Part shown: positions 1 through 62,656 of the stretch, in pieces
Layout of the letters: the number at the start of each line of letters is the position of its first letter
How positions within the stretch are numbered: the stretch's first letter is position 1
Source of the DNA: Macrostomum lignano
Lineage: Eukaryota
Reading direction: 5' to 3'
Length of the DNA: 64,000 bases
Assembly (NCBI GenBank): GCA_002269645.1
Contig: NIVC01000201.1
Span: 434,001-498,000 of the forward strand
Translations under genes and position numbers: made by a program
Notes under the pieces: model-generated
The model's input: the letters and a program-made list of their open reading frames with translations, nothing else
Database searches by the model: none
What the model was told of the DNA's origin: nothing

Positions 1-174
1 CGGCCAGGCGGGCCTCCAGCTCGCGCAGCTGCCGTTCTACGCCGGACAGCTTCGTGCGCAGGTCGAACTGCGTCGCAGGATCGTCGGCGGCGGCTTCGCA
101 CAGTCGTCGGCAGAGGTCGCGCGCCTGCGACAGGTCCGACCGGAACGACGCCAGCTCCTCGTCTGTTGGCCGGC
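1..174 (-). CDS. DST/MACF1: Exon (partial, runs off the left edge): spectrin repeat
   Basis: EELASFRSDLSQARDLCRRLCEAAADDPATQFDLRTKLSGVERQLRELEARL. Acceptor tccgcag|GC at 174; an in-frame alternative exists at 162. Confidence 0.82.
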
Positions 175-3100
175 CTGCGGATGATGGTAGATGAGAGTCA
201 CCCCCCGATCTGACATCCCGTCACCACCCGATCTGACATCCCGTCACCACCCGATCTGACATCCCGTCACCACCCGATCTGACATCCCGTCACCACCCGA
301 TCTGACATCCAGTCACCAGCCCGATCTGACATCCCGTAACCCCCCGATCTGACATCCCGTCACCACCCGATCTGACATCCCGTCACCCCCCGATCTGACA
401 TCCCGTCACCCCCCGATCTGACATCCCGTCACCAGCCCGATCTGACATCCCGTCACCAGCCCGATCTGACATCCCGTCACCACCCGATCTGACATCCCGT
501 CACCACCCGATCTGACATCCCGTCACCAGCCCGATCTGACATCCCGTCACCCCCGATCTGACATCCCGTCACCAGCCCGATCTGACATCCCGTCACCAGC
601 CCGATCTGACATCCCGTCACCCCCCGATCTGACATCCCGTCACCAGCCCGATCTGACATCCCGTCACCAGCCCGATCTGACATCCCGTCACCTCCCGATC
701 TGACATCCCGTCACCAGCCCGATCTGACATCCCGTCACCAGCCCGATCTGACATCCCGTCACTTCCCGATCTGACATCCCGTCACCTTCCCGATCTGACA
801 TCCCGTCACCTCCCGATCTGACATCCCGTCACCCCCGATCTGACATCCCGTCACCAGCCCGATCTGACATCCCGTCACCAGCCCGATCTGACATCCCGTC
901 ACCAGCCCGATCTGACATCCCGTCACCTCCCCGATCTGACATCCCGTCACCTTCCCGATCTGACATCCCGTCACCAGCCGATCTGACATCCCGTCACCAG
1001 CCCGATCTGACATCCCGTCACCTCTGACCCCGATCTGACAGCCCGTCACCTCCCCGATCTGACATCCCATCACCTCCCCGATCTGACAGCCTGTCACCGC
1101 CCAACCAACACACCAGCTTCCCCGGCCTCATCCAGTCGATCAACCGCTGCGGGCAGCGCTTCGCCCAGCCGGCCCAGCAGGGCGTAGAAGTCCAGGGTCG
1201 GCTGGCGCAGCTGCTCCAGGGCGGCCGCTCGCTCAGCCAGTCGGCGCCGCAAGTCCTCCAGCGCGGCCAGCAGGTCGGCGAGGCCGGACCGCACGCGGTT
1301 GACGGCCGCCGTCGCTGCCTCCGTCGCGGAATTTTTATCGTCATCGGCAGCCTGCGATGCCAGCAGTTCCAGCAGAGCTATCAGCGCCTCGCAGGTGGCT
1401 CGGAGTTGATCTGCTGCCGGCTGCTTCGAGTCCAGCTCGTCTAGGAGGAGGCTCACCTGCGCGCGGGGAGAGCGCAGTATTGCACAGTTTAGGAATGAAA
1501 TTCACTACAGCTTAGGATGCGTCACGGGCCCAGCCCGTCATCAACTAAGCCCGTCACCACCCCAGCCCGTCACCGCCCCAGCCCGTCACCGCCCCAGCCC
1601 GTCACCGCCCCAGCCCGTCACCGCCCCAGCCCGTCACCGCCCCAGCCCGTCACTAACCTGCTGAGCCTGGGCGCTGGCCAGAGCAGGCGTGGTCACCACG
1701 GGCCCCAGCACAGCCAGCATTCGCTCCTTCTGCGTGACCCAGTGCCGCAGGTTGTCGCACTGAGCTTCCCGGTCGGCCAGCAGCTCCACCAGCCGTCGGG
1801 CAGTCGTGAGTCGCGCCGCCACCCGGCCAATGAGTTCGGACAGTCGAGCAGCCAAACGGCTGGCCGACTCGCCGACGTGTCGAGCTCCGACCACGCCGGC
1901 CGCTGGCCGATTTCGCTGCAGCTGCTCGGCCGAGGCCGTCACGCCGGCCACCAGCGGCTCAACGTCGGCGGCCAGGCTGCGCTGAAAGTCGGCCGCCAGA
2001 CGGACACTTCGCTCCGCCTCCGGCTGGGTGTCGATGACCGAAGACGACGAACTGGAGGCGGCTTCGGCCTCCTTGGCTTCCAGAGCGGCCTGGGCGGCGG
2101 CGTAGGCGGCCCAGAAGCGCTGCAGCTGGTCGGCGGCGCTGTCGATGTCGGCGCTACGGCGGCACAGGGCGTCGCCAATTGAAGCGTAGCGGCCCTGAAG
2201 GTCGTCCAGTTCTTGAGCGATCTCGGACAGCTCTGCCAAGAGTGCGGGACCGGCTGGGTTAAAATTTACAATGTGTACTTTTAAAAAAAATAAACAGATG
2301 TACACAACAAGCGTCGTATTTTACAATCCAACACCCACAAACCACTAGTTTAAGTAGTAGGATATAGAATTAATTACGCTCGTAGATAAATAAACAAACA
2401 CAGCGTGCCAGAAATGTGGAGCATGCTGGAGCACAACAGTGAAGAAAATAAAAACACGATTTGTCTACTTATAGTAGTCCAGAGGTTGGCAAAATCCAGC
2501 CTTTCGGGTGCTTTGAAACTTCCGGCCCGCTCAATGTTTGTCTCTTCTCTCCTCTCTCCCCTCTCTCAGCTCTCCTCTCTTTCCCGCTTATCTCTCCTCT
2601 CTCCCCTCTTTCCCTCTTCTCTCTCCTCTCTCCTCTCTCCCCTCTCTCAGCTCTCCTCTCTTTCCCGCTTCTCTCTCCTCTCTCCTCTCTCCCCTCTCTC
2701 AGCTCTCCTCTCTTTCCCGCTTCTCTCTCCTCTCTCCTCTCTCCCCTCTCTCAGCTCTCCTCTCTTTCCCGCTTCTCTCTCCTCTCTCCTCCCCCTCTCT
2801 TCTCTCGCTCTCGTTTCTCCTCTTGTCTTCTTTCTTATCTCTTTTCTCTAATCTCTAATCTTCTATTTCCTCTCCTTTCCTCTCTCATCTGGCCCCTAGC
2901 CATAAGCTGGATTCTTCATCCGGCCCTTGGGATAAAAAGACCACAACGAGGAAATGAGCATGTGGTACAACATCTAGGAAACTACATGGTGCGTCATTAG
3001 CTTAAAATTTCGGTTACCATGCAACGAGGCCGTGTTGCCAACGCTGCTGCAGATCCCGCTGGACTCGGAGCTGGACACCGGGCTAAGAGGCGACCGCAGG

Positions 3101-6100
3101 AGCGGCGAATTCCTTGCCCAGCCTGCGGTCGTCCAGCGTTATTGATATTTTAAAAAAATATATAATTTACAATGCATGTCGTTCCATCAAGGAAGCCAAA
3201 ATACTACAAGAGCGAAGCTGATCGAATATTTCTATGAAAATATGACAACTACTGTATACCAGTGCGTCGGTGCGTGAGTTTCTGTCAGCTAGTCTTAATA
3301 ATAACTAATGCAAATTTCTATCTGCAGCTAATAGTTTGAGTAATATATCATGCAAAACTGACTCGGCGATTAAAATTTAAATCCATCATTTTTAGAGGGG
3401 GGTGGGGGTGCGTAGCCAGTGGTGTACCAGCGGCCCAGGCTCGATTCCAAGTGCAGTAACATTGATTTGGAGCTAAATTGGAATCTCGGCTTGGGCCAAC
3501 CCCCCCCCCCAAGGCACAGTGAAGTGAAGCTTTTAAAACACTCGATCAGCTGTCAACACATTTTTTGTTTATGGGAAAACCCAACAGTAGCCTCGAACCT
3601 ACAGTTTCAAGATCAGTACATGCAATAAGCCAGAGGTATTTTGTTGCTTGTGATTTTTTTCAGGCTAAAAACCTGGCCTCATAAATCTGAGCGATTCTAT
3701 ATGCCTTTATCATTAAGTCACGTGACTGACTGATTAAGACGAGAAAAGCTAAATGGGCCGTAAATAACACGAAGCAATACTTTCTGTCAGTAGTGTGTTG
3801 TGACTGTTGTGAACATTTTGTTGCAGGACTATGCTAGTTTTGCCCAGGTTGTCCAGATAGTTGCTAGCCTTATTCATTAAACCTCCTTGGTAGACGGCTT
3901 ATTAGCTATTTATTATTATTACTGACTGTCAACAGATCGGACACTCACGCGGCCGTTTCGGACTCATCGGGCTGGCGGAGCCAGCAGCTGCGGCAGCTCC
4001 GGCGCCGCTGCCGTTCAGAGCGACGTCGAAAGCCAGTCCAGCCACCATCAGGCGGTCCATGGCCGGCTGGAACTCCTCGAACTGTCCGGTGAAGTCGTCG
4101 GCTGTTCGACGCTGCGCCGTCAATTCGTCGGCGTCGAGCGCCACAGGCGGCAGGCCGCGCAGGCGGGCCTCGGCCCGGCCCAGCCAGTCGAGCGCCTCCC
4201 GCCTGGCCCGGTCGAACTCGTCAGCCCGCGATCGGCGCAGCTGGAGCTCCTCGGCGCGGGCCTCCATGCGCGAATTGAAATCTGTCCACAGCTGCTCCAC
4301 CTAAATTAGCGAAATCAAAATTAAACAGCATGAGTAACTATGCCTTGGTTTAAAAAGTTAAATGATTCGGCATCTAATTAGTTGCTCAATCCAATGGGGA
4401 ATCAACGAACCTCCTGCCAGGCGTCTCGCACGAACTCTCCGGCAGCTCCGGCCGATTCGGCGGTTGCCGCTCCCTCGGGCTGCTCCGCGGCCTCGCCGGC
4501 GGCGCTTGTCGCCATCCTCAATAGTTCCCTGGCCAGGGTCCGCACGGTGGCCAGGCCGCCCTCGGCCAGCTCCGCCCGCTGCCTGTCTAGTGAGGCCAGC
4601 CGTTCCGACCAGGCGGCGTCTGTCGCGGCGGCGGCCGCCGCGGTCGGCAACGGGGCGGCAAGCGCCGGCACCTGCTGGGCCAGCCAGGCTCGGGTCGGCC
4701 GGGCCGCCGACAGAAACTCCGACAGGCGGTCGCGCGCCGAATCGACGGCGTCTCGACGCTCCGCCAGCCGCCGGGCAACCTCGTCGAATTGACGACGGCA
4801 GGCGTCAGCGCGCTCGCGCAGCTGCCCGGTGGCTGACGCCGAGGCTGGCGACGCGGCCGCCTCCGCCTCTGCCAGGCCGTCCTCGGCCTCCTGCAGCGAG
4901 GCCTGGCGGCACTGCAGCTCCGCCTCCAGCACTTTCACCTGCTGGGCCTGCGGCATTCGGACAACGACGATTTGAGAGATAAAGTACACACGCGCTCCGA
5001 AAGGGGCTTTGGGCATGCTCTTGAGCATTCAGAAGTCAAAAAGTCAAAAAAGGTCATAGAAGGTCAGAAAAGGTCATGAAAGGTTATAGAAGGTCACAGA
5101 AGGTCATGAGAGGTCATAGAAGGTTCTAAAAGGTCATAAAAGGTCATGAAAGCCGCCCCTCTCACCTGCTCATCCAGCAGCTCGGGCCGCAGTCCCACCG
5201 GCCGCATGGCGTCCAGCTGACGGAGCGCCAGCGCCAGCCACTGCTGCAGTCCGGCGATGGCCTCCTGCAGGCCGGAGCAGTGCAGCAGCTGCCGCTGAAG
5301 GCTGGCGCCCAGGTCTGCGCACTCCTGCTTCAGCCGGTCGTGTCGGTTCAGAATGGCGTTCACTTGGTCCTCCGGTTCTGTCGCTGAGGCGGGCTGGCCG
5401 ACCTGCGGGTTCATTCATCAGGGGAGAGGCCATTATGCCTTTCCTTGCCATTCATCCGCAAAAAAGCTTTTTGGGTGCCATTCTCTGAGCCATTAGTCAG
5501 TTCACTTGAGTTTGTCACTCCCGCCATGTCATTTCACTCGAGTTTGTCACTCCCGCCATGTTATTTCACTCGAGTTTGTCACTCTTGCCATGTCATTTCA
5601 CTCGAGTTTGTCACTCCCGCCATGTCATTTCACTCGAGTTTGTCACTCCCGCCATGTCATTTCACTCGAGTTTGTCACTCCCGCCATGTCATTTCACTCG
5701 AGTTTGTCACTCTTGCCATGTCATTTCACTCGAGTTTGTCACTCTTGCCAAGTCAGTTCACTCGAGTTTGTCACTCTTGCCAAGTCAGTTCACTCGAGTT
5801 TGTCACTCCTGCCAAGTCAGTTCACTCGAGTTTGTCACTCTTGCCAAGTCAGTTCGCTCGAGTTTGTCACTCTTGCCAAGTCAGTTCACTCGAGTTTGTC
5901 ACTCCCGCCATGTCATTTCACTCGAGTTTGTCACTCCCGCCATGTCATTTCACTCGAGTTTGTCACTCTTGCCAAGTCAGTTCACTCGAATTTGTCACTC
6001 TTGCCAAGTCAGTTCACTCGAGTTTGTCACTCTTGCCAAGTCAGTTCACTCGAGTTTGTCACTCTTGCCAAGTCAGTTCACTCGAGTTTGTCACTCCCGC

Positions 6101-54100: not shown

Positions 54101-57100
54101 GCAGCCTCGTCGGCTGGCGGAGCCACCGCTGCTCGGGAGGGCGGCGGCTGCTGCTGCTGCTGCTGCGGCGGCGGTGGTGGCGGTCTTCGTCGCCGGCCGG
54201 TTGCCGGTGGCAGACGCGGAACCGCCGATTCACTGAGCATTTGAGACGCCATCGATGAGACAGCGTCTTCCTCAACCGAGTCTCCTGTTTCGTCTGTTTC
54301 TTTTGCTGCTGCTGCTGCTTTGGCTACGATGGGCGTGGAATGCAGCTGGTTAGCCGGCTCTCTGCTCTCTACTAGCGGCTGCTCTGCACTCTGCTCCGCC
54401 CGAGCGGGGCTGGCGTTTTGTGTGCGCAGCGACAGACCCGAGTCAGCCGAGGTGAGGCCGCCCCCAAACTCGTACTCAGGCCCCGTTGAGCTCGCGGTTG
54501 AGGCCGGGGCGCTGGGCCGCACAATGGCCTCACTGTCGGCCTCCCCCTCCGACGGGGCGACCCGCCCAGCCAATGGCTGCTTGGCCAGCACGGCCGCCTC
54601 CTCTGCCAGTACGGAGCGGTGCTGCTGCACTTCGGGCGGGCGCCGGGTCAGCACGGCCGCGTCCTGACCGATGAGTCCGTCGGCGACGGCCTGCCGCAGG
54701 CTGATCCGCCGGCCGGTGCGGTGGTTCACATAGACGCCCTGGTCCGGGTCCACAATGCCCAGCTTCACCGCCTCTTCGAATGTCACGGCCTCCTGCGTGA
54801 CAGGGTTCAGCACCGAGGCCGGTCCGGCCAGCCGAGCCCGAGAGACCCGAGCCCGGTCCAGCGGCCGCATCACCACGCTGGAGGTGAGCAACACCGGGCA
54901 GGACAGCTGCATGAGCAGCATAGCCTTGTCAGCTGTCAGCAGGCTGCCGCTTGCCGCCTCCTGAATAGTGTACACCGCGCCGCTTTGCGAGTCCACAACC
55001 TGGCCCTGCCTGGCGTCGAACACGCCGGCCTGAGCAGCCTCCAGGACCGTCAGCTCGGCGCCGTCCGACTGTTGGTGCCGCCGCAGCCCGGAGCCGGCGT
55101 TCAGCGCGGCAGCCGCCTGCTCGCTCACCAGGCCGCGATGCACCGCAGTCGCCAGAGGGAGGCCGCAGAACCGGCCGGCAGCCAGGTCCACCTGGCCCCG
55201 CTGCACGGCAGTTGCTAGGGGCAACCGAACAGCCGTCGCACTGACCGCCACGGCATCGGGAAACGGCACGGCGACCTCCTCGCTGTGCAGCAGGACTCGC
55301 GACTCGGCCAGGGCGACGGTCAGCGGCTGCGGCTCCGGCTGGCACTGAAGGCGGCAGTCCGCGGTCAGGAGGCCTCGTTGAAGCGCTTCGCTCAGGCTGA
55401 CGGATTGTCGCTCGATGCCGCCGCCCGTGGAGCTGGCGCAGTCCAGCACCAGCGCTTTCTGCTCGCGGTCGATGACGCCGTCGCTAAGCAACCGCGGCAG
55501 GTCAGCGCCATCGTTTTCGCCGTTTCCAGATTGCAGAAGTCCCTGCAATGGTGGTGTGGCCAGTTGTTTAACACATGTAGCAGCTAAGCATCATGCTTAA
55601 AATAGACCTAGATTTTGGGACTGTGTGCACTCTGGAGGAGGCCTGTGTGCACCCGGGAGGAGGGCTGTGTGCACTCTGGAGGAGGCCTGTGTGCACCCGG
55701 GAGGAGGGCTGTGTGCACCCGGGAGGAGGGCTGTGTGCACCCGGGAGGAGGGCTGTGTGCACCCGGGAGGAGGGCTGTGTGCACCCGGGAGGAGGGCTGT
55801 GTGCACCCGGGAGGAGGCCTGTGTGCACCCGGGAGGAGGCCTGTGTGCACTCTGAGAAGCGAGTCCTAAGTGGGAATTATTTTAAACCTCTCATGGACCC
55901 GCCGGCGCCTACCGAACTCAACGCCTCCCCGGGCGTCAACGGCGGCAGCAGCAGGCCGCGCCGCCTCGCCTCCGGGAAGTCCAGCCAGTCGCCGGTGTTG
56001 AAATCCCGCATTCTCCCGGTCGCCAAATCGACCACTCCGGCTGAGCAGGCCTCTGCAAGCGTCATTTTGCCTGCGTCTGACGATGCGACAACCTCCTTGA
56101 CGCCGGTGTCCAGCAGGGAGCCGGCCCCGGTCGCGGCCTGGGCGAAGGTGAGCAGCCGGCCTGAGCAGGGGTCGAGGACGCCGCCAGGCCGGGCCAGCCC
56201 GCTGTCCAGCAAGCGGCTCAGGCCCAGCCGAACTGACGCCGAGTCGGCGCCGCCAAAATGGCCGCGAGTTCGAGCCCGCACCAGCCCCGCATCGTCGGGA
56301 TCGGCCGAGTCGACAGTCTGCAGTTGCTGCTGCTGCTCCGAGGCCTCCTTGACTGCGCTGGCAGCCGGATCGAGTCCTGCCGGCTGCAGGATGCCGGTCC
56401 GCAGGCTGGCGATGGCGGCCTCGGCGCCGGCCACGCAGGCCGCGTAGTCGGCGTTGACGCGGGCGAGCTCCTCCGCCAGCTGCTGCGCGTTGCCGCCGCT
56501 TCCGCCGCCGCCGCCGTCGACAGCTTCGTAGCGTTGCGCGGCCGCGGCCAAGGCGCCGCCGGCGGTGTTCAGAGCGTCAATGTCCGGCCGGGCGGAGCGC
56601 AGGCTCTGGCGCAGGGCCAAGGCCCGTTCAAATGACCGGCAGAGCGGCTCCAGTGAGGAGTGGGCAGCGGGGCGGCCGGCGGACTGCAGGTTGCGCAGCT
56701 TCTGCCGGCAGCCGGCCAGCCAGACGGCGCAGTCCTGCACCAGCTGCTGGTAGGCGACGAAGTCACCGGAGCAGGCGCGCAGAGTGCGCAGGCGCGGCTC
56801 CAGCGATGCTGACAGATGGCGCCGACACCTGGCGACTGTGGCGTCGGCTGCCGCAGAGGCTGTCGAGGCTGCTGCGGCAGCAGCGGAGGACTGCTGAGCT
56901 GCTCGCTGCTGCTTGCTGATGCAGTCTTGCAAGGCTTCGTTTAAGCTGGCTTGGGTTTTCTGCAAACAGAGCAATAATTGGGTGACGGTCAGGCCCGGCT
57001 TGCTATTTGTACACACAGTCAGTCCCGGCTTGCTATTTGTACACACATTCAGGCCTGGCTTGCTATTTGTGCACACAGTCAGTCCTGGCTTGCTATTTGT

Positions 57101-60100
57101 ACACACAGTCAGCTTGCTATTTGTACACACAGTCAGTCCTGGCTTGCTATTTGTACACACAGTCAGTCCCGGCTTGCTATTTGTACACACAGTCAGCTTG
57201 CTATTTGTACACACAGTCAGCTTGCTATTTGTACACACAGTCAGTCCCGGCTTGCTATTTGTACACACAGTCAGTCCTGGCTAGCCATCATCCGCTACAA
57301 GCTCACCGTGAGCGCCTCCAGGCTGCGGTCCATCTGCGCTTGGGTCAGCGGAAATCCGGCCACCTCGGTGAAAGCGAGGGCCTCGGCAGCCGTCAGGCGA
57401 ATCTCCAGTTCGGCCACGGCGTCGCTGAGGCTGCCGTTACGGGTGTCGGCGGAGTCTTCCGCTTGGCTGCCGGCCAGCGAGCTCTGGCAGGAGCGCCGGC
57501 AGAGCTCCAGCTCGGCGCGCAGCTTCTTTGACGCTTCATCGTCGTTGATACTTTCCGTGGCCTCGTCCGTCAGCTGCTGTTCAACTTCGCGTTCAACGGC
57601 CGCCAGAGCCGCTCGCCGCTGCTCAGCCGACGTCGCAAGCGTCGACGAAGACCGGCTGCCGCTGCGCAAGCCGGCCAGGCGGCTCAGCAGGTGGCGCCGT
57701 CGTAGGGCGAGCCGGCGCCGGCGCCACAGGGCAGCGGCGGAGGCCGCCTCGGTTTGGAGGCTGCGCGCCGCGGACACGGCGGCCGACCAGGGGTGCGCAG
57801 GCAGACGGCCGGCAGCCAGCAGGTTGTTGTTGCCGTTGTGCTTGCAGTCGACGATGTCACGGCGGACGACGAAGGCGACACCTACACATTGGACCGTCGA
57901 TGCGGTGCAGAGCGACTGTCAGATTGGTGGGCAGGCTGGACCACTGGCACAGCAGCTGGCCGCTCAGGCTGCCCGGGTTGCCATCAAAAACTGCTGGCGC
58001 AAGCAGGGCTTGATGAGGCGCGGAGGCTGCGAGCTGCAAGGGCGAGGATGGGGTGGGGGTGGCGGATGCGGGCACAGTGCTGAGAATGTGTAAATGTAAA
58101 TGAGAGCCTTTGCAGCCCGCAGCCGTGTTTCTTCCGACTCAGTGTGTGAGCGCGTGCGTGCTCAGGGGCTTGCCGAAAGCGACTCACCCAGTTGGCCTCG
58201 CCAGCCGCCCGGTCCAGCTGCTCCCGCAGGCCGTCCACCGCTCTCAGCCGGCTGGCTGTGGATTCGGCCGACTGGCCGGGCCGCTGGTCGAGAAATTCGG
58301 TGCCAAGTCGGCGGGTGATGTCGGCCAGGCTGGCCCGGACGCGCCTCGCCCCGGCGGAGTGGGCGGCAGCGGCCGCGGCGGCTTCGGTCTGGTGCTGCAG
58401 GCAGCCGGCCAGGCTGAGGTGGGCGGCCCAGCGCTCCTCCAGGCGGCGCAGGCAGGCCTCGGCCGGGTGCGCGGCGGCTGGCGAGCCGGAAGTGGAGCGG
58501 CCACCGGCAGCTGCGTAGCGGCGAATCAGGCGGGCCCCGGAGGTCACCGCGGCGGCGAATTTCGCCTCTCGATCTTCGAGCTCGGATACGGTGGACTGCG
58601 GGCGGGATTTGGCTAGGATTAGCGAATTTTGAGATTAGTGCGCATAGACTGGATTGACAAGAACACAGGTAAATATCATACCTGAAGTCGCTGGAGACAG
58701 CCCTGTGGGGGAGAGGAAAAGGCGGCAGTTGTAGTTTAAATTTTGTTAGCAAATCGCTGCGAGTTTCAGAAAGCTTAAAAAATAATTTTAAAAAATGACA
58801 CCGGATGTCCTGTATGCCATGTATGGCTTGTAATATATGATATAGGATTCGCAGTGGGAGAGTGGGAGAGGTAAGTGAGAGATCCCAACCAGCCGGACAG
58901 TGGGAGAGTGGGAGAGGGAAGTGAGAGATCCCAACCAGCCGGACGGGGGTGGGAGAGGGAAGTGAGAGATCCCAACCAGCCGGACAGGGGGTGGGAGAGG
59001 GAAGTGAGAGATCCCAACCAGCCGGACGGGGGGGTGGGAGAGGGAAGTGAGAGATCCCAACCAGCCGGACGGGGGGTGGGAGAGGGAAGTGAGAGATCCC
59101 AACCAGCCGGACGGGGGGTGGGAGAGGGAAGTGAGAGATCCCAACCAGCCGGACGGGGGGTGGGAGAGGGAAGTGAGAGATCCCAACCAGCCGGACAGTG
59201 GGAGAGTGGGAGAGGGAAGTGAGAGATCCCAACCAGCCGGACGGGGGGCGGGAGAGGGAAGTGAGAGATCCCAACCAGCCGGACGGGGGGTGGGAGAGGG
59301 AAGTGAGAGATCCCAACCAGCCGGACAGGGGAATGGGCACGCGGTCGCGCACCTTTAAATAGGCCTCAACGTCGGCGACCTCGGCCAGCCGCAGCTGCCT
59401 CCGCTGCAGCCGCAGCACGCGGGTTTCGCGCTCGTCCAGCCAGGCCAGAAGAGACGCCGCGGACTCGGCGAAGGCCAGCCAGGCCTCCAGATGGCGAAGT
59501 CGACGCTGCGCGGCGCCGGTCAGATCGGTGCAGGCCGCTTCCAGCTCCGTCAGCAAGGCGGCGTAGGTCGCTCGGTCCGACTCCGGCAGGCCGTCACCGA
59601 TAGCGCCGCAGGCCGCCGCTTCGGCCACCGTGTCGTTGGCGGATTGGCAGAACTCCCGCTGCCAGTCGACTTGACGCCGAAGCTCGTCAAGGCCAGCAAT
59701 GTCTTCTTGAGCGGCAGCGGCGGCGGCAGCGGCGGCCATGGTGGCGGCCTCCGCCCGATCCAGCTGTTCACGCCGCTCCCTTACGCGGCCCATGCAGCGG
59801 CGGATCGGCGAGAAGGCGGGCGAGTCCGAGAAGGCCCGGCTGACGCTCGTCACGTCTCTGTAGTGCTGCCGCTCCAGCCGGCGGTGCTGCTGGCCGCGGT
59901 GCTGCTGCTGAAGCAGGCGAATCCGCGGCGCCAGGCTGTCAACGAGACGGTGCAGCTCCAGGTAAGCCAGGTGGGCGGTGCACAGCGAGTGGTACAGCTG
60001 CTCGGCGCGGCCGTAGCGCTCATCTCGCAGGCGCTGGATCCGCTCGAACAGGCGATTGACGGCCTCGCCGGCTTTGGAGACACCCCTGGCCAAGCGGTCC

Positions 60101-62499
60101 ATGGCGGACTCGGCGTCCATGGCGTCCAGGCTGCTGCTGGCCGAGGCGGCCGCGGAGGACAAACTGGCGCGGAGGTGGCGCTCCGAGTCGCCGAGGTCGG
60201 CCAGGCGGGCCTCCAAGGCGCCGATGTCAGTCCTGGCGGCCTCGGCCAGCCTGTGCAGGCGCTCAAGCCGCTGCCTGTGCAGCTGAGCGGAGCGGCAGCG
60301 ATCGCGGGCGAGGGCCAAGCAGCGCTCGGCTTGGCGGCCCAGCTGGTCCGGGTGCGCACCGGCCTCCAGCTGCTGCTGGCGCCGCCGCTGATGCTGAGGG
60401 ACAGCGGCTGAGGCCGCCTGAGACAGGCGGTCGTAGCGCTGGCGGAGATCCTGCAGCTGCACGCTGGTGCGCTCCGAGATCTTTGGGAAGGAGGAGGGTA
60501 GGGATGGTGCTCTCAGGGTAGGCTCAGTCACTCATTTAGTCACTCAGTCATTGCTTAATCAGCCACTCCATCGCTGACTCAATTACCTCACTCTCTCATT
60601 GAGTCAGTCACTCAGCCACTAACTCAGCCAGTCACTCAGTCAGTCCCTCAGCCACTAACTCAGCCACTAACTCAGTCAGTCACTCAGCCACTAACTCAGC
60701 CAGTCACTCAGTCAGTCACTCAGCCACTAACTCAGTCAGTCACTCAGCTACTAACTCAGCCACTAACTCAGCCACTAACTCAGTCACTCAGCCACTAACT
60801 CAGACATAACTCAGCCACTAACTCAGTCAGTCACTCAGCCACTAATTCAGTCAGTCACTCAGCCACTAATTCAGTCAGTCACTCAGCCACTAACTCAGTC
60901 AGTCACTCAGCCACTAACTCAGTCAGTCACTCAGCCACTAACTCAGTCAGTCACTCAGCCACTAACTCAGTCAGTCACTCAGTCAGTCACTCAGCCAGTC
61001 ACTCAGCCAGTCACTCAGCCAGTCACTCAGCCACTAACTCAGTCAGTCACTCAGTCAGTCACTCAGCCACTCCCTCACCTCAGTGAGCAGGGCTTGAGCC
61101 GCTTCCGCATTGACCCGCGCCTGAGTCAGGCCAGTTGGCGGGTCGCCGGCCGCGGCGGCTTCCTTGGCCGCCCGCTGCAGCCAGGCGGACAGCTCGGAGG
61201 CGGCTTCCCGATACGCCAGCTCCTCCCGCTTGTTCGCCTCTTCCTCGGCGTCGCCGTCGCGCTCGTCACCGGCCTGGCTGCGGCCGATCGGCCTGTCGGC
61301 CAAGGCGTCGTAGAGCGCGCTGAGGTAGGTGATGAGCGACAGGTCGTCGGCGTGCGGCGTGTCCACGTCTTCGGGCTCGAGGAGGCGGGCGACGCCCAGG
61401 TGGCGCTCGTTGATGTCGAAGGCCAGGCGCAGCCGCTCCGCGTTGGACAGCCGGCTGGTCCGCTCCGGATCGATGAGGTCCGGCCTGGGGGCGGGTGCGA
61501 CAGCTGACTGGCTTTGACCGCGACTTTTGGGATGCAGTTAAGGCTGCGCCTGCCCATACCTTGTATGAGCTGTTTCCTTGGGTTCTCCACTTTCCACCTC
61601 CTTTCTCTAGGCCTCCTCTCACCCTACCTCTCCTCTCACCTTACCTCTCCACTCACCCTACCTCTCCTCTCACCCTACCTCTCCACTCACCCTACCTTTC
61701 CTTTCACCCTACCTCTCCTCTCACCCTACCTCTCCTCTCACCCTACCTCTCCTCTCACCCTACCTCTCCTCTCACCACACCTCTCCTCTCACCCTACCTC
61801 TCCTCTCACACTACCTCTCCTCTCACCCTACCTCTCCTCTCACCCTACCTCTCCTCTCTACCTCTCCTCTCACCCTACCTCTCCTCTCTACCTCTCCTCT
61901 CACCCTACCTCTCCTCTCACCCTACCTCTCCTCTCACCCTACCTCTCCTCTCACCCTACCTCTCCTCTCACCCTACCTCTCCTCTCACCCTACCTCTCCT
62001 CTCACCCTACCTCTCCTCTCACCACACATCTCTCACCCTACCTTTCCTCTCACCCAACCTCTCCTCTCATCCTACCTCTCTTCTCACCATACCTCTCCTC
62101 TCACCCTACCTCTCCTCTTACCCTACCTCTCCTCTCACCCTACCTCTCCTCTCACCCTACCTCTCCACTCACCCTACCTCTCCTCTCACCTCCCTCTCAC
62201 CCTACCTCTCCTCTCACCCTACCTCTCCTCTCACTCTACTTCACTCTACTTTTCCCTCTCCTTCTCCGTCCCTCTCACCTGGCTCTGTGCAGCAGACACA
62301 CAAATGCTCTGCCATCCTGCCAGCAGGAGGTGAAGTTGGTCACCGACAGTCCATAGGGCGCCAGCTCGGCTCTGCACCAGGCCAGCAGGAAGTCTCTCAC
62401 AGCTCGATTGTCGTCCAACTGCTGCTGCTGCTGCTGCGGCTGCTGCTGCCGCTGCAGAGAGCCGGATGCTGTGGAGAAGCTGGGCAGAATCTCCGATAT
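1..62499 (-). CDS. DST/MACF1: Spectraplakin (shot/VAB-10/MACF1/dystonin family), partial multi-exon gene, both ends outside the window
   Basis: Spliced translation gives CH2 (LLAWC...VTNFTSCWQDGRAF..LLHRARPDLID...AFDINERHLGVARLLEPEDVDTPHADDLSLITYLSALYDAL), plectin-like plakin spectrin repeats, plectin-type repeats and then tandem spectrin repeats. All junctions are GT-AG, and phases match except inside exon 57307-58033 and at about 9.36 kb. Confidence 0.93.
197..1097. repeat. Intronic minisatellite, 21-24 bp unit (cccgatctgacatcccgtcacca[g])
   Basis: Direct tandem copies fill almost all of intron 175-1113. Confidence 0.95.
1114..1456 (-). CDS. DST/MACF1: Exon: spectrin repeat
   Basis: VSLLLDELDSKQPAADQLRATCEAL... 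Acceptor cgcgcag|GTG, donor GCT G|GTGTGT. Phase 0 to 1. Confidence 0.85.
1529..1653. repeat. Intronic minisatellite, 16-17 bp unit (cccagcccgtcaccgc[c])
   Basis: Tandem copies abut the 5' splice site at 1657. Confidence 0.9.
1658..2253 (-). CDS. DST/MACF1: Exon: spectrin repeats
   Basis: LAELSEIAQELDDLQGRYASIGDAL...NLRHWVTQKERMLAVLGPV. Acceptor aacccag|CC, donor CAG|GTTAGT. Phase 1 to 0. Confidence 0.87.
2541..2890. repeat. CT-rich low-complexity tract with a roughly 52-bp unit (about 4 copies)
   Basis: cctctctcagctctcctctctttcccgctt recurs at about 2560, 2641, 2693 and 2745. Confidence 0.85.
3018..3122 (-). CDS. 105-nt S/P-rich exon inserted within a spectrin repeat
   Basis: Acceptor accgcag|GC, donor G|GTAACC. 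Phase 1/1, RWARNSPLLRSPLSPVSSSESSGICSSVGNTASLH. Isolated GC-rich island in an AT-rich intron; not in the ORF track. Confidence 0.75.
3949..4300 (-). CDS. DST/MACF1: Exon: spectrin repeat ending in SPMSPKRP
   Basis: VEQLWTDF...EALDWLGRAEARLRGLPPVALDADELTAQ. Acceptor atttag|GTG, donor CCG C|GTGAGT. Phase 0 to 1. Confidence 0.88.
4411..4947 (-). CDS. DST/MACF1: Exon: spectrin repeats
   Basis: AQQVKVLEAEL...CRRQFDEVARRLAERRDAV...FVRDAWQE. Acceptor ccgcag|GCC, donor GAG|GTTCGT. 179 codons. Confidence 0.86.
5031..5150. repeat. Intronic 10-bp tandem repeat (aggtcaNNNa-like)
   Basis: aggtca recurs with period 10 from 5051 to 5146. Confidence 0.9.
5166..5402 (-). CDS. DST/MACF1: Exon: spectrin repeat
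   Basis: LNRHDRLKQEC...LQEAIAGLQQWL...RPVGLRPELLDEQ. Acceptor ccgcag|GTC, donor CAG|GTGAGA. 79 codons. Confidence 0.88.
5497..6197. repeat. Intronic minisatellite, 32-bp unit (actcgagtttgtcactcttgccaagtcagttc)
   Basis: About 22 copies in two alternating variants. Confidence 0.95.
6303..7007 (-). CDS. DST/MACF1: Exon: spectrin repeats
   Basis: TDRLQTAQSWQEAV...EAELLARQPDMKALAAAGQRLV...RPVSEPELAALAQRVRGF. Acceptor tccgcag|ACC, donor GAG|GTTTGC. 235 codons. Confidence 0.86.
7251..7472 (-). CDS. DST/MACF1: Exon: spectrin repeat
   Basis: DINNELLSRQQPLLTLCYQTESLLHKYSDAVSEDQRDRL...LENQ. Acceptor tctgcag|GAC, donor CAG|GTTCGT. 74 codons. Confidence 0.85.
7543..8480. repeat. Intronic minisatellite, 31-bp unit (tacctcagtgcatgtaggctgcccagtgcgg)
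   Basis: About 27 copies, decaying to a roughly 25-bp unit at 8390-8480. Confidence 0.95.
8604..8750 (-). CDS. DST/MACF1: Exon: first spectrin-repeat rod exon
   Basis: VDAKKYADDLLTDLERELAKLRSLQARLLAFPSATLEEPPVAQMLEEHQ. Acceptor caattag|GTT, donor CAG|GTGCGT. 49 codons. Confidence 0.82.
8971..9014 (-). CDS. Candidate 44-nt microexon
   Basis: Long pyrimidine tract ctcttctcctattttcttttttattatcttgattag|, donor AGC|GTGTGC. Open in phase 1 to 0 (CYERTSLKPDSRTS). Confidence 0.35.
9098..9144 (-). CDS. Candidate 47-nt microexon
   Basis: Acceptor cttttcag|, donor CGG|GTAAGTA. Open in phase 2 to 1 (YFCVVFKCINNSSLT). No homology support. Confidence 0.35.
9358..41527 (-). CDS. Apparent single giant exon (about 32.2 kb, about 10,700 aa) of 54-aa/141-aa tandem repeats, broken by many 1-nt indels
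   Basis: Acceptor ccattcaaacag|CCA at 41527 (phase 0), donor CG|GTAAGA at 9357. The same repeat reading frame is recovered throughout (ORFs of 790, 2656, 813 and 1100 aa), and I saw no intron-like sequence in between. Confidence 0.8.
9700..41285 (-). repeat. Coding tandem array: 162-bp (54-aa) unit with 11 interspersed 423-bp (141-aa) units
   Basis: Unit e.g. APTDAQAAESRPSEERQEQLKPEAKELELRADQESGAVSKPEGAAKQAEVKDEV. Long units anchored near 9790, 12320, 13550, 17185, 20840, 27545, 28620, 29850, 35130, 37175 and 39865. Confidence 0.95.
41723..42039 (-). CDS. Exon: S/D-rich low-complexity linker
   Basis: Acceptor ctttgcag|AT, donor CAG|GTTTGT. Phase 1 to 0, consistent with both neighbours. Confidence 0.75.
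42119..43634 (-). CDS. Exon: S/E/D/K-rich low-complexity region with one plectin-like repeat cluster
   Basis: Open for 505 codons; contains FDTISGQQLKFSDCLDMGLIDLNNSCLVDPVTRIELPLLDALERNVVD. Acceptor tattcctacacag|CCT, donor GAA G|GTAAGC. Phase 0 to 1. Confidence 0.8.
44022..44095 (-). CDS. 74-nt exon of the central block
   Basis: Acceptor ccccag|CAG (NAGNAG, alternative end 44092), donor AAG|GTAAGA. Phase 1 to 0 bridges its neighbours exactly. Confidence 0.72.
44180..49022 (-). CDS. 4.8 kb exon: two arrays of 50-aa plectin-like repeats separated by an S/T/E-rich spacer
   Basis: Uninterrupted ORF of about 1614 aa extending to acceptor tttttag|GCT at 49022; donor GAA G|GTAATG. Repeat core LDPxSGTVTDPRTGEELSIDEAxxxxLL. 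Phase 0 to 1. Confidence 0.85.
44290..46950 (-). repeat. Coding tandem array: 300-bp unit (two 50-aa plectin-like halves), about 9 near-identical copies
   Basis: Sequence lines repeat every 300 nt (44341, 44641, 44941 ... 46441). Confidence 0.95.
47790..48845 (-). repeat. Coding tandem array: 7 diverged 50-aa plectin-like repeats
   Basis: KPKFEDVANSLDPxxGTVxDPRTGEELTIDDALxKKLLTPSEAKKLxxKV x7, with many synonymous differences. Confidence 0.9.
49233..49660. repeat. Intronic minisatellite, 30-bp unit (ctagccctagattcaccagccaatcacaga)
   Basis: About 14 copies starting about 35 nt behind the donor at 49697. Confidence 0.93.
49698..50024 (-). CDS. DST/MACF1: Exon: plectin-type repeat
   Basis: VQSIYDAKSRCMLPPSEALDLGLIDATRATYMDSVTGDVSTLADAISEGLV. 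Acceptor gtgcag|GTG, donor GAG|GTGAGG. 109 codons, phase 0/0. Confidence 0.87.
51237..53561. repeat. Intronic satellite, 20-bp unit (gactctggagagactctagc), about 116 nearly perfect copies
   Basis: Only a few variant copies (about 52895, 53075, and the right end). Confidence 0.97.
53818..55542 (-). CDS. DST/MACF1: Exon: plectin-type repeat region with low-complexity P/Q/A linker
   Basis: VSLSEALQRGLL, LTVLEAAQAGVFD, VLNPVTQEAVTFEEAVKLGIVDPDQGVYVNHRTGRRISLRQAVADGLI, MKDPTTQSRVSFADAIRR. Acceptor ttgcag|GGA, donor GAG|GTTTGC. 575 codons. Confidence 0.87.
55612..55855. repeat. Intronic minisatellite, 22-bp unit (ctgtgtgcacccgggaggaggg)
   Basis: About 11 copies in intron 55543-55912. Confidence 0.92.
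55913..56959 (-). CDS. DST/MACF1: Exon: end of plakin domain (SR9-like) and first plectin-type repeats
   Basis: YQQLVQDCAVWL...AEELARVNADY, then GVLDPCSGRLLTFAQA, MTLAEACSAGVVDLATGRMRDFNTGDWLDFPEARRRGLL. Acceptor ttgcag|AAA, donor TCG|GTAGGC. 349 codons. Confidence 0.85.
56990..57280. repeat. Intronic minisatellite, 30-bp unit with 24-bp deletion variant (cttgctatttgtacacacagtcag[tcccgg])
   Basis: About 10 copies in intron 56960-57306. Confidence 0.92.
57307..58033 (-). CDS. DST/MACF1: Exon: plakin SH3-like region and SR5-SR7, with an internal +1 frame break near 57860-57920
   Basis: Acceptor ttgcag|CTC GCA (LAASAPHQALLAP...GQLLCQW). The downstream frame (VGVAFVV...SAARSLQTEAASAAALW...SLEALT) is offset by 1 nt. 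Donor ACG|GTGAGC. Confidence 0.75.
58188..58595 (-). CDS. DST/MACF1: Exon: plakin domain, about SR4-SR5
   Basis: STVSELEDREAKF...HPAEACLRRLEERWAAHLSLAGCL...REQLDRAAGEANW. Acceptor ccgcag|TCC, donor TGG|GTGAGT. 136 codons, phase 0/0. Confidence 0.85.
58851..59330. repeat. Intronic minisatellite, about 43-bp G-rich unit (gggagagggaagtgagagatcccaaccagccggacgggggggt)
   Basis: About 11 copies with a variable G-run, starting about 20 nt behind the donor at 59352. Confidence 0.92.
59353..60480 (-). CDS. DST/MACF1: Exon: plakin domain, about SR1-SR4
   Basis: AHPDQLGRQAERCLALARDR...RLERLHRL and GVSKAGEAVNRLFERIQRLRDERYGRAEQLYHSL parallel plectin SR1/SR2 as I recall them. Acceptor ccaaag|ATC, donor AAG|GTGCGC. 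376 codons, phase 0/0. Confidence 0.88.
60522..61070. repeat. Intronic minisatellite built from tetramers (agtc/actc/agcc/acta), main unit 24 bp
   Basis: agtcagtcactcagccactaactc and shuffled variants. Confidence 0.92.
61079..61484 (-). CDS. DST/MACF1: Exon: C-terminal half of CH2 and start of first plakin spectrin repeat
   Basis: RPDLIDPERTSRLSNAERLRLAFDINERHLGVARLLEPEDVDTPHADDLSLITYLSALYDAL. Acceptor ccccag|G, donor GAG|GTGAGG. Phase 2 to 0. Confidence 0.92.
61611..62250. repeat. Intronic minisatellite, 17-bp unit (ctacctctcctctcacc)
   Basis: About 37 copies just behind the donor at 62278. Confidence 0.93.
62279..62499 (-). CDS. DST/MACF1: Exon: CH1-CH2 linker (polyQ) and N-terminal half of CH2
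   Basis: Acceptor ccgccag|ATA TCG GAG (ISEI, cf. plectin HFQ|ISDI), donor AG|GTGAGA. Encodes ISEILPSFSTASGSLQRQQQPQQQQQQLDDNRAVRDFLLAWCRAELAPYGLSVTNFTSCWQDGRAFVCLLHRA. Phase 0 to 2. This frame is not in the ORF track. Confidence 0.9.
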
Positions 62500-62656
62500 C
62501 TGGCGGGCAAGAGAGGCGTCTCAATTTTCTATTCTGCTTGAGTAAAAACCATCCGGAGAAAAAATCTAACGATTTAGCCGGAATAAACAAAACTTTGTGA
62601 TAATTAAGAACAAAATTTCTTTTAACGTCCATTTCTAAAGATGCAAAATATCAAAG

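What the first reader, a model, noticed from the sequence alone, without database searches (positions are those of the whole stretch)
1..62499. All-in-one giant spectraplakin: CH + plakin + plectin repeats + disordered array + spectrin rod, over 16,000 aa in this window
Seen: the summed exons give about 48.3 kb of CDS with both ends still outside the window. Established: plectin repeats and spectrin rods are split between isoforms in C. elegans (VAB-10A vs VAB-10B) and combined in MACF1b, BPAG1b and long Shot isoforms of roughly 7,000-9,000 aa. Inference: the full-inclusion isoform would be about twice that size, approaching the titin class.
Basis: partly seen in the sequence, partly recalled or inferred. 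Interest (0 to 1): 0.8.

Follow-up and report, generated by a model that had tools for sequence, protein, structure and literature searches.

The report
Giant flatworm spectraplakin with repeat exon
The window holds most of one Macrostomum lignano cytoskeletal linker (spectraplakin) gene, in which a single exon of about 32 kb encodes thousands of residues of acidic 54-residue repeats between the filament-binding repeats and the spectrin rod; if fully spliced in it would be the largest protein of its family, but no transcript has been seen and this assembly breaks the repeat's reading frame.

Summary
The observation largely holds. On the minus strand I built a 23-exon model (62499 to 1) in which every intron is GT-AG and no stop occurs outside the array. 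The order is CH2, plakin domain, about 30 plectin repeats, a 31,931-nt exon of 54-aa acidic repeats, then a spectrin rod. The exons sum to 47,793 nt, about 15,930 codons. Both ends lie outside the window.

The organism is Macrostomum lignano. Published fragment models use the same junctions for every block boundary except array to rod.

- The array is not translatable as written. 45 of 172 repeat intervals are off-frame and 6 more contain stops. These come from 53 deletions against 5 insertions, most of one base and mostly in short same-base runs. An independent contig (Mlig_3_7) carries an unbroken 2,734-codon ORF over the array's end, so I read these as assembly errors.
- Array length is uncertain. 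The damaged zone is three copies of a 3.65-kb unit, and the other assembly has different block sizes.

The array is coding: N/S is 1.25 against 3.34 expected under neutrality. The rod's best named foreign matches are MACF1, Shot and dystonin.

Whether one transcript includes everything is untested; the exon phases also allow skipping. EF-hand and GAR domains are outside the window. I rate it a new variant of a known kind.

The parts
62279..62499 (-). E1: N-terminal half of the CH2 domain (…NFTSCWQDGRAFVCLLHRA-)
   Evidence: AG acceptor and GT donor, in frame. Identical to P0002. CH1 lies upstream in L001.
61079..61484 (-). E2: C-terminal half of CH2 and the start of the plakin domain
   Evidence: Pfam CH E 3.8e-6, 27.5 bits against a cut-off of 26. 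Junctions match P0002.
59353..60480 (-). E3: plakin-domain spectrin-like repeats, including the RLERLHRLAE and LRDERYGRAEQLY motifs
   Evidence: Colinear phmmer alignment to Larimichthys plectin and insect plakins, E 1e-41 to 1e-36. Weak Pfam Spectrin_4 hit.
58682..58702 (-). E4: 7-codon micro-exon (GCLQRLQ)
   Evidence: Present in P0002. Flanked by AG and GT.
58188..58595 (-). E5: plakin domain, continued
57307..57915 (-). E6: plakin domain. A shortened, degenerate stretch sits at the SH3 position, followed by the conserved post-SH3 helix.
   Evidence: Aligns to P0003 residues 758-869, directly after its SH3. Pfam SH3_10 was not detected.
55913..56959 (-). E7: end of the plakin domain and the first degenerate, GC-rich plectin-like repeats
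   Evidence: Weak Pfam Plectin hit. Junction to E8 matches P0001.
53890..55542 (-). E8: degenerate plectin repeats plus a Pro/Gln-rich stretch
   Evidence: Pfam Plectin E 7.1e-19. In frame.
49698..50024 (-). E9: plectin-like repeat exon
   Evidence: Canonical junctions, phase 0.
44180..49022 (-). E10: main plectin-repeat exon. It holds 7 and then about 19 repeats at a strict 50-aa period, separated by a Ser/Thr/Glu-rich linker. The second block is 8.6 copies of a 300-nt unit at 98% identity.
   Evidence: Pfam Plectin E 1.4e-169. TRF. Repeat spacing. AF2 pLDDT 84.7 with a β-hairpin and helices per unit. The top six PDB fold hits are all plakin repeat domains.
44022..44095 (-). E11: short linker exon
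   Evidence: Same junctions as in P0087.
42119..43634 (-). E12: linker exon. It holds one or two plectin-like repeats and then an acidic, Ser-rich, low-complexity stretch.
41723..42039 (-). E13: linker exon
9597..41527 (-). E14: single array exon of 31,931 nt. It holds about 178 copies of a 54-aa (162-nt) unit rich in Glu, Ala, Lys, Gln and Pro, arranged in 12 blocks separated by 11 copies of an 87-aa spacer. Net charge is about -7 per unit.
   Evidence: TRF. Block map and composition. Coding signature: third-position diversity is twice that of first position, and N/S is 1.25 against 3.34 neutral. Clean-zone frame has 0 stops in 2,691 codons. Frame breaks. Intact 2,734-codon ORF in L002. AF2 pLDDT 55. 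The acceptor is shared with P0087. The donor at 9597 is inferred.
8604..8750 (-). E15: first rod exon
   Evidence: In-frame join to E14. P0083 starts inside this exon.
7251..7472 (-). E16: rod
   Evidence: Junctions identical to P0083.
6303..7007 (-). E17: rod (spectrin-like repeats)
   Evidence: Weak Pfam Spectrin and Spectrin_Anc-1 hits..
5166..5402 (-). E18: rod
4411..4947 (-). E19: rod
   Evidence: Weak Pfam Spectrin hit..
3949..4300 (-). E20: rod
1658..2232 (-). E21: rod
1114..1456 (-). E22: rod
1..174 (-). E23: rod exon that runs off the window. P0083 and P0085 continue it for at least 750 more residues.

Best explanation
The window is the central 62.5 kb of one spectraplakin gene of the flatworm Macrostomum lignano, on the minus strand.

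Shown here:
- 23 exons are joined by canonical introns into one frame.
- The encoded order is CH2 (CH1 is just upstream), a plakin domain, about 30 plectin (plakin) repeats at a non-canonical 50-aa period, Ser/Asp/Glu-rich linkers, one exon of about 32 kb holding about 178 acidic 54-aa repeats punctuated by 11 spacers, and then the start of a MACF1/Shot-type spectrin rod.
- The array shows a protein-coding substitution pattern.

Inferred:
- The roughly 58 small indels that break the array's frame in this window are consensus errors of the assembly, left in its most self-similar zone.
- The gene makes at least one isoform in which the array sits in series between the plectin-repeat module and the rod.
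- The N-terminal actin-binding domain binds F-actin, and the plectin repeats bind intermediate filaments (which this species has).
- The rod leads to a microtubule-binding C-terminus outside the window.
- The mostly disordered polyanionic array, with one short helix per unit, acts as a very long compliant spacer or entropic spring, analogous to titin's PEVK region.
- Shorter isoforms that skip the array and/or the plectin block are likely to coexist, as in other spectraplakins.
For: One frame:
- E1 through the start of E14 gives 4,919 codons, 13 GT-AG introns and no stop.
- Plectin repeats to array gives 3,033 codons and no stop.
- The end of the array through the rod gives 1,280 codons, 9 GT-AG introns and no stop.

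Independent gene models share these junctions: P0002 and P0001, P0086, P0087 and P0088, and P0083.

Species and locus: L001 and L002 from Mlig_3_7 match the window at 96.5-99.4%.

Domains:
- Pfam CH and Plectin.
- Plakin-domain alignment, E 1e-41.
- Post-SH3 segment.
- Plectin-repeat fold: pLDDT 84.7, and the top PDB hits are the desmoplakin, envoplakin and plectin repeat domains.
- For the rod, an exhaustive HMMER search gives a Haliotis MACF1-like protein with CH, SH3_10, spectrin, EF-hand and GAS2 domains (E 2e-30), plus Drosophila shot, Bombyx MACF1 and Anopheles dystonin-like proteins.

Array is coding:
- Codon-position diversity is 0.080, 0.111 and 0.175.
- N/S is 1.25, against 3.34 under neutrality and 5.16 and 2.47 in the wrong frames.
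- The proposed frame has 0 stops, against 79 and 172 in the other frames.

Frame breaks are artefacts:
- There are 53 deletions against 5 insertions, mostly inside short same-base runs, each with 0-3 mismatches to the nearest intact unit.
- No frameshift occurs in the 15.9 kb of non-array exons.
- L002 has one unbroken 2,734-codon ORF over the array's end. 25 of its 28 gaps against the window are bases missing from the window.

Disorder: AF2 mean pLDDT is 55, with one helix per unit. Composition is E 22.6, A 16.4, K 8.7, Q 8, P 8%.

Intermediate filaments exist in this species (PMC4016567).
Against: - No RNA evidence of any kind was available. No gene model spans the array-to-rod junction, so the donor at 9597 is my inference.
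- As written, the window cannot be translated through about 30% of the array.
- Array length is unreliable. The damaged zone is three copies of a 3.65-kb unit that differ mostly by 1-nt gaps. L002's block sizes (at least 25, 8, 5, 10, 1) differ from the window's (…40, 21, 21, 6, 14, 1). The species carries about three subgenomic copies of most loci (PMC10733133).
- EF-hand and GAR domains were not seen.
- Pfam spectrin hits in the window's rod exons are below cut-off.
- SH3 was not detected.
- The spring function is an analogy based on composition only.
Confidence: 0.72

Rival explanations
1. The gene is the same, but the isoforms are modular and there is no all-in-one product. The array and/or plectin exons would be cassette exons or alternative terminal exons. 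The proteins actually made would then be (a) a Shot/MACF1a-like form with ABD, plakin domain and rod, and (b) a VAB-10A-like form with ABD, plakin domain, plectin repeats and perhaps the array, ending in the Ser-rich read-through tail. The 16,000-aa species would be absent or rare.
For: - E3-E10 all start in phase 0. E10-E13 sum to 6,750 nt. E14 begins in phase 0, as does its successor E15. Every skipping pattern therefore stays in frame.
- Reading through the E14 donor stays open for 80 codons and then stops at 9357.
- Reading through the E11 donor stops after 3 codons.
- Alternative use of the plakin-repeat region is the rule in Shot, and VAB-10A and B have mutually exclusive ends (PMC2173965; PMC2199363, listed).
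Against: - There is no canonical AATAAA near either candidate end. The only hits in the block lie inside coding repeats.
- Drosophila does make the full ABD, plakin-repeat and rod isoform.
- The array's 3' junction to the rod is canonical and in phase.
Confidence: 0.4
2. The frameshifts are real. This copy's array, in one of roughly three subgenomic paralogues of a neopolyploid, would be decaying. The locus would then be a pseudogene or would encode only truncated products.
For: - 45 off-frame intervals and 6 with stops, as the window is written.
- The species carries multiple paralogous copies of most loci.
- A diverged second copy exists, P0088.
Against: - No frameshift or stop occurs in 15.9 kb of non-array exons or in 13 kb of clean array.
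- Indel events outnumber substitutions against the nearest intact unit. They are more than 10:1 deletions and mostly in short same-base runs.
- The near-identical Mlig_3_7 contig is in frame.
Confidence: 0.1
3. The array is real and coding but is over-expanded by misassembly. The true exon would be several kb to more than 10 kb shorter, so the protein would still be large but nearer 10,000-12,000 aa.
For: - There are three tandem 3.65-kb copies at 96-98% identity whose differences are mainly 1-nt gaps.
- Block structure differs from the Mlig_3_7 contig.
- Chimerism and excess or missing copies are documented for assemblies of this genome.
Against: - The copies also differ by substitutions: 45 mismatches in 5.5 kb against L002.
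- Tandem higher-order repeats are expected in a real array.
- L002 starts inside the array and so gives no upper bound.
Confidence: 0.3
4. The 162-nt array is a non-coding intronic satellite that only mimics an ORF.
For: - Nearly every other intron of this gene holds a minisatellite.
- The period is a multiple of 3, and the GC-rich composition gives few stops.
Against: - The substitution pattern is codon-position specific. N/S is 1.25 against 3.34 neutral, and the signal appears only in the proposed frame.
- The proposed frame has 0 stops, against 79 and 172 in the other frames.
- The array is entered and left in phase through canonical splice sites.
- Gene models run from the plectin repeats into it.
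Confidence: 0.03

Closest known systems
Drosophila Short stop (Shot), long plakin-repeat isoform (8,846 aa)
   Same: - The order is ABD, plakin domain, plakin repeats and spectrin rod.
- The plakin repeats sit in a very large exon inserted between the plakin domain and the rod.
- The repeats are spaced out rather than packed into 4.5-repeat globular domains (PMC2173965; here).
- The rod is homologous: D. kikkawai shot scores E 3e-28.
   Different: - The window's gene has an additional exon of about 32 kb, holding roughly 10,600 aa of acidic 54-aa repeats, between the plakin repeats and the rod. Shot has nothing comparable.
- The plectin repeats have a strict 50-aa period in recently homogenised arrays.
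- The SH3 is degenerate.
- Inclusion in mRNA has been shown for Shot but not here.
Vertebrate MACF1b and BPAG1b/dystonin-b
   Same: A spectraplakin with plakin repeat domains placed between the plakin domain and the spectrin rod. The best named foreign matches to the rod are annotated MACF1 or dystonin.
   Different: - The vertebrate proteins have canonical 38-aa repeats in plakin repeat domains, and no disordered tandem array.
- Identity is only about 22-26%.
- EF-hand and GAR domains were not examined here.
C. elegans VAB-10A and VAB-10B
   Same: One locus carries both plectin repeats and a spectrin rod. The exon phases and a read-through tail here would permit mutually exclusive A-like and B-like products.
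   Different: No polyadenylation signal or transcript end has been shown here. All blocks can also be joined in frame, which is not reported for vab-10.
Titin PEVK region and similar disordered spring segments of giant cytoskeletal proteins
   Same: It works alike in principle. It is a long tandem array of short units rich in Pro, Glu, Lys and Ala, predicted to be mostly disordered, and placed in series within a filament-linking protein.
   Different: There is no sequence relationship. The unit is 54 aa with one predicted helix, and the array is strongly acidic (about -7 per unit). Any mechanical role is untested.

Membership tests
Spectraplakin (MACF1 / dystonin / Shot / VAB-10) | N-terminal actin-binding domain made of two calponin-homology domains | tested here: met
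   CH2 is in the window (Pfam E 3.8e-6; aligned to plectin and insect CH2). CH1 is not in the window, but it is present just upstream on the matching Mlig_3_7 contig, in model P0002.
Spectraplakin (MACF1 / dystonin / Shot / VAB-10) | Plakin domain: a run of spectrin-like repeats after the ABD | tested here: met
   Colinear phmmer alignment over about 660 residues to Larimichthys plectin and two insect plakins, E 1e-36 to 1e-41. E 1e-25 in the database search. The post-SH3 segment also aligns.
Spectraplakin (MACF1 / dystonin / Shot / VAB-10) | SH3 domain embedded in the plakin domain | tested here: inconclusive
   No Pfam SH3_10 hit in E6. A shortened stretch of about 43 aa occupies the expected position, immediately before the conserved post-SH3 helix.
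Spectraplakin (MACF1 / dystonin / Shot / VAB-10) | Dystrophin-type spectrin-repeat rod | tested here: met
   An exhaustive HMMER search with rod model P0084 gave, as its best named foreign hits, Haliotis MACF1-like (E 2e-30; it carries CH, SH3_10, spectrin, EF-hand and GAS2 domains), Drosophila shot, Bombyx MACF1 and Anopheles dystonin-like. Pfam Spectrin hits on the window's exons are below cut-off.
Spectraplakin (MACF1 / dystonin / Shot / VAB-10) | C-terminal EF-hand pair and GAR (GAS2) microtubule-binding domain | not testable with these tools
   These lie beyond the window. P0085 extends the rod by at least 750 aa without reaching them.
Spectraplakin (MACF1 / dystonin / Shot / VAB-10) | All modules belong to one transcription unit | not testable with these tools
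   Only indirect support is available: same strand, canonical in-phase junctions throughout and overlapping fragment models. There are no RNA data.
Plakin repeat proteins (plectin, desmoplakin, envoplakin) | Plakin (plectin) repeat motif: a β-hairpin followed by two helices | tested here: met
   Pfam Plectin E 1.4e-169 with 22 stretches. The AF2 model has pLDDT 84.7 and an E-E-H-H pattern per unit. The top six Foldseek PDB hits are plakin repeat domains, E 6e-6 to 4.5e-4.
Plakin repeat proteins (plectin, desmoplakin, envoplakin) | Repeats of about 38 aa packed into globular 4.5-repeat plakin repeat domains | tested here: not met
   The period is a strict 50 aa, with an extra short helix per unit. 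The global TM-score to solved plakin repeat domains is only about 0.2, despite significant local matches. This resembles Shot's non-clustered repeats.

The most novel reading that the evidence does not exclude
The full-inclusion mRNA is made. M. lignano would then produce a single polypeptide of about 17,000 aa or more (roughly 1.9 MDa). In it, a mostly disordered polyanionic array of about 10,000 residues, encoded by one exon of about 32 kb, sits in series between an intermediate-filament-binding plakin-repeat module and a spectrin rod. To my knowledge this would be the largest spectraplakin, the first with a built-in PEVK-like spring, and one of the longest animal coding exons. It occurs in a model animal with RNAi and transgenesis.
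Probability: 0.4. Interest if true: 0.7.

Novelty: new variant of a known kind. Interest (0 to 1): 0.55.

Why it matters
Spectraplakins are the conserved linkers between actin, microtubules and intermediate filaments. Known isoforms top out at about 9,000 aa and consist of folded modules. A member with a tandem array of several thousand disordered acidic residues spliced in series would add a new mechanical element, a long compliant tether, to this family. It would nearly double the family's size record, and it could be tested in a transparent flatworm that has RNAi and transgenesis.

The locus also matters for annotation. It is currently split in public databases into at least eight fragment models. 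Some carry misleading names such as 'Glutaredoxin domain-containing' and 'UCH domain-containing'. The array is absent from all but the first unit or two.

The case is also a caution that long coding tandem arrays in long-read assemblies can carry dense one-base deletions that hide giant ORFs.

Tried and rejected
- Pfam on the rod exons, the array and the linker exons gave only sub-threshold spectrin hits or nothing. Rod identity had to come from the exhaustive HMMER search.
- A homology search with the rod (word-index tool) returned only M. lignano models.
- A homology search with the array returned only three M. lignano fragments covering the plectin-to-array junction. No relatives of the 54-aa repeat were found elsewhere.
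- The contig look-up for P0085, meant to reach the EF-hand/GAR end, found nothing on record.
- Literature searches for Macrostomum with spectraplakin or plectin found 0 papers. Spectraplakin with planarian found nothing relevant.
- A poly(A)-signal scan found no AATAAA near the candidate alternative ends. A cluster in intron 8 (50076-50477) looks like plain AT-rich intron sequence.
- Rfam and tRNA scans of the window found nothing.
- The long plus-strand ORFs, for example 44362-46998 (878 aa) and the 208-aa series across the array, are rejected as antisense artefacts of the repeats.
- Small introns inside the array as an explanation for the frame changes are rejected. The changes are 1-nt indels, and the same sequence is continuously open in L002.
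- My first exon table was off by one base at each donor and gave 12 stops.

Full report
**What is in the window**

All long ORFs of interest lie on the minus strand. The sequence is eukaryotic. GC-rich exons are separated by introns, and nearly every intron carries its own minisatellite.

A database search with the translated N-terminal exons found two Macrostomum lignano models at 89-93% identity overall. They are essentially identical wherever the gene models agree. P0002 is BOX15_Mlig001914g1, which has CH1 and CH2. P0001 has a CH domain and plectin repeats. The next hits were plectin and spectraplakin N-termini from insects and fish, at E 1e-25 to 1e-21.

The contig carrying P0002 is NIVC01004408.1, from assembly Mlig_3_7. 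It matches window 64000-51274 at 96.5-99.4% and ends inside the 20-nt minisatellite at 51210-53562. The window is therefore M. lignano, from the same or a near-identical copy of that locus. CH1 lies just upstream of the window.

**Gene model**

I placed splice sites by eye and with a simple phase-aware scan. I then checked them by translation.
- E1 (62499) through E13 and the first 2.2 kb of E14 give 4,919 codons, 13 GT-AG introns and no stop.
- The plectin exon through four short introns into the array gives 3,033 codons and no stop.
- The end of the array through nine introns into the rod gives 1,280 codons and no stop. One search contained an off-by-one error, which one search corrects.

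Independent fragment models use exactly these junctions:
- P0002 for E1-E5, including the 7-codon micro-exon E4.
- P0001 for E7-E8.
- P0086, P0087 and P0088 for E10-E14.
- P0083 for E15-E23.

No model spans E14-E15. That junction (donor at 9597, acceptor at 8750) is my inference.

**Domains**

- CH2: Pfam E 3.8e-6, above the cut-off.
- Plakin domain: one colinear phmmer alignment of about 660 residues to Larimichthys plectin and two insect plakins, E 1e-36 to 1e-41. It includes the conserved RLERLQRLAEK-type and LRDGRYPQA-type motifs.
- The segment after the SH3 position also aligns. The SH3 itself was not detected and looks shortened.
- Plectin repeats: Pfam E 1.4e-169 in E10 and 7e-19 in E8.

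In E10 the repeats form two blocks, of 7 and about 19 units, at a strict 50-aa period. The second block is 8.6 copies of a 300-nt unit at 98% identity.

A four-repeat segment folds confidently from a single sequence (pLDDT 84.7). Each unit forms a β-hairpin and helices. The top six PDB matches are the plakin repeat domains of desmoplakin, envoplakin and plectin, at E 6e-6 to 4.5e-4. Global TM-scores are only about 0.2, so the motif is shared but the globular 4.5-repeat packing is not. This is the situation described for Shot's 33 spaced repeats in its 10,497-nt exon (PMC2173965).

**The array (E14, 41527-9597)**

The array holds about 178 units of 54 aa (162 nt). They fall into 12 blocks separated by 11 copies of an 87-aa spacer. 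Composition is E 22.6, A 16.4, K 8.7, Q 8.0 and P 8.0%, with a net charge of about -7 per unit. AF2 gives a mean pLDDT of 55, with one helix over the conserved SEERQEQLKPEAKELELRAD core and the rest unstructured.

The array is coding:
- Among 73 distinct in-frame units, diversity at codon positions 1, 2 and 3 is 0.080, 0.111 and 0.175.
- Non-synonymous to synonymous differences are 1.25, against 3.34 expected under neutrality and 5.16 and 2.47 in the two wrong frames.
- In the clean zone 37553-29480 the proposed frame has 0 stops in 2,691 codons. The other two frames have 79 and 172.

**Frame breaks**

The window's array is not one ORF. The repeat's frame changes 45 times, and six more intervals carry compensating indels with stops. 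The damage is confined to 39.3-37.7 kb and 27.2-13.9 kb.

Comparing each off-length unit with its nearest intact unit shows 53 deletion events against 5 insertions. Most are single bases inside short same-base runs. Each unit has only 0-3 mismatches. The 15.9 kb of non-array exons have no frameshift at all.

The Mlig_3_7 contig NIVC01000790.1 (L002) covers the array's end and the rod. There the repeat frame changes once in 49 units, and a single ORF of 2,734 codons runs to the end of the array. Against its best-matching window segment (25139-19589, 98.7% identity), 25 of 28 gaps are bases missing from the window. I conclude that the breaks are consensus errors in the hardest-to-polish zone. 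I put this at about 85%.

**Array length is uncertain**

- The damaged zone contains three tandem copies of a 3.65-kb higher-order unit at 96-98% identity, whose differences are mostly 1-nt gaps.
- L002's block sizes (at least 25, 8, 5, 10, 1) differ from the window's (…40, 21, 21, 6, 14, 1).
- The genome is neopolyploid, with about three copies of most loci, and its assemblies contain chimeric and mis-represented copies (PMC10733133).

The true exon could be shorter, or could differ between copies.

**The rod**

Pfam hits on the window's rod exons are sub-threshold. An exhaustive HMMER search with rod model P0084 found 95 proteins at E of 0.001 or better. The best named ones are:
- Haliotis MACF1-like, E 2e-30, which carries CH, SH3_10, Spectrin_3/4, spectrin, EF-hand and GAS2 domains.
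- Drosophila kikkawai shot.
- Bombyx MACF1.
- Anopheles dystonin-like.

P0085 shows the rod continuing for at least 750 aa beyond the window. The EF-hand and GAR end could not be reached.

**One product or several?**

No RNA data were available. The phases are permissive. E3-E10 all start in phase 0, E10-E13 sum to 6,750 nt, and E14 begins in phase 0, as does its successor E15. Skipping the array, the plectin block or both therefore stays in frame.

Reading through the E14 donor gives an 80-codon Ser-rich tail and a stop at 9357. Reading through the E11 donor stops after 3 codons. Neither has a nearby AATAAA. Both a Shot-like full-inclusion isoform and a VAB-10-like split therefore remain possible.

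**Verdict**

Three of its points go beyond the evidence:
- the continuous open frame, which this assembly breaks;
- the exact size;
- the existence of the all-in-one isoform.

The locus is a spectraplakin by four of five testable defining features. Its distinctive trait is a giant exon of acidic repeats that is under coding constraint. I found no relative of this exon outside this species and no mention of it in the literature. I rate it a new variant of a known kind, of moderate to high interest, pending transcript and long-read confirmation.

Noticed in passing
window 197-1102, 5495-6198, 7545-8391, 49237-49661, 51210-53562, 55621-55850, 56988-57282, 58862-59331, 60610-61077, 61613-62239, 62655-64000: Nearly every intron of the GC-rich parts of the gene carries its own private minisatellite, with units of 17-42 nt and up to 118 copies at 99% identity. 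The Mlig_3_7 contig NIVC01004408.1 ends inside the 20-nt array.
   Followed up: partly
window 41528-49022 compared with the rest: There is a sharp composition break inside one gene. Exons E10-E13 have GC 0.42-0.50 and introns 10-13 have GC 0.30-0.32. E1-E9, the array and the rod have GC 0.60-0.67. The plectin-repeat block may have a different history from its flanks.
   Followed up: no
window 9357-9596: If the array exon's donor is not used, the frame stays open for 80 more codons (a Ser-rich tail, RRPSSLSISS…) before a stop. This is a possible alternative terminal exon, reminiscent of plakin C-terminal tails. No AATAAA lies nearby.
   Followed up: partly
window 50076-50477 (intron 8): A cluster of four AATAAA and two ATTAAA lies on the gene strand within 400 nt, just upstream of E9. 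It reads like plain AT-rich intron sequence, but it could mark an alternative 3' end after E8.
   Followed up: partly
window 14003-24322; L002 1-9000: There are three tandem copies of a 3.65-kb higher-order unit (21 repeats plus a spacer) at 96-98% identity, differing mostly by 1-nt gaps. The other assembly has different block sizes. This could be real copy-number variation between subgenomic copies, or a misassembly.
   Followed up: partly
P0086, P0087, P0088 (UniProt A0A1I8… models of M. lignano): Fragment models of this gene carry misleading automatic names ('UCH domain-containing', 'Glutaredoxin domain-containing'). P0088 is a second copy with the same plectin-to-array architecture, visibly diverged from the window (57% identity over the aligned array stretch). 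It is presumably a subgenomic paralogue.
   Followed up: partly
window 58682-58702: There is a 7-codon micro-exon (GCLQRLQ) inside the plakin domain. It has good splice signals and is present in P0002.
   Followed up: yes
window 44362-46998 (+) and the 208-aa ORF series across 10155-36933 (+): There are long antisense ORFs, up to 878 aa, opposite the plectin and array repeats. They are repeat-driven artefacts, not genes.
   Followed up: partly
L001 32744-40488 compared with window 59038-51274: In this unique region the Mlig_3_7 contig lacks 30 bases relative to the window, 25 of them inside exons. This probably explains the frame-shifted stretches in models P0001 and P0002.
   Followed up: partly
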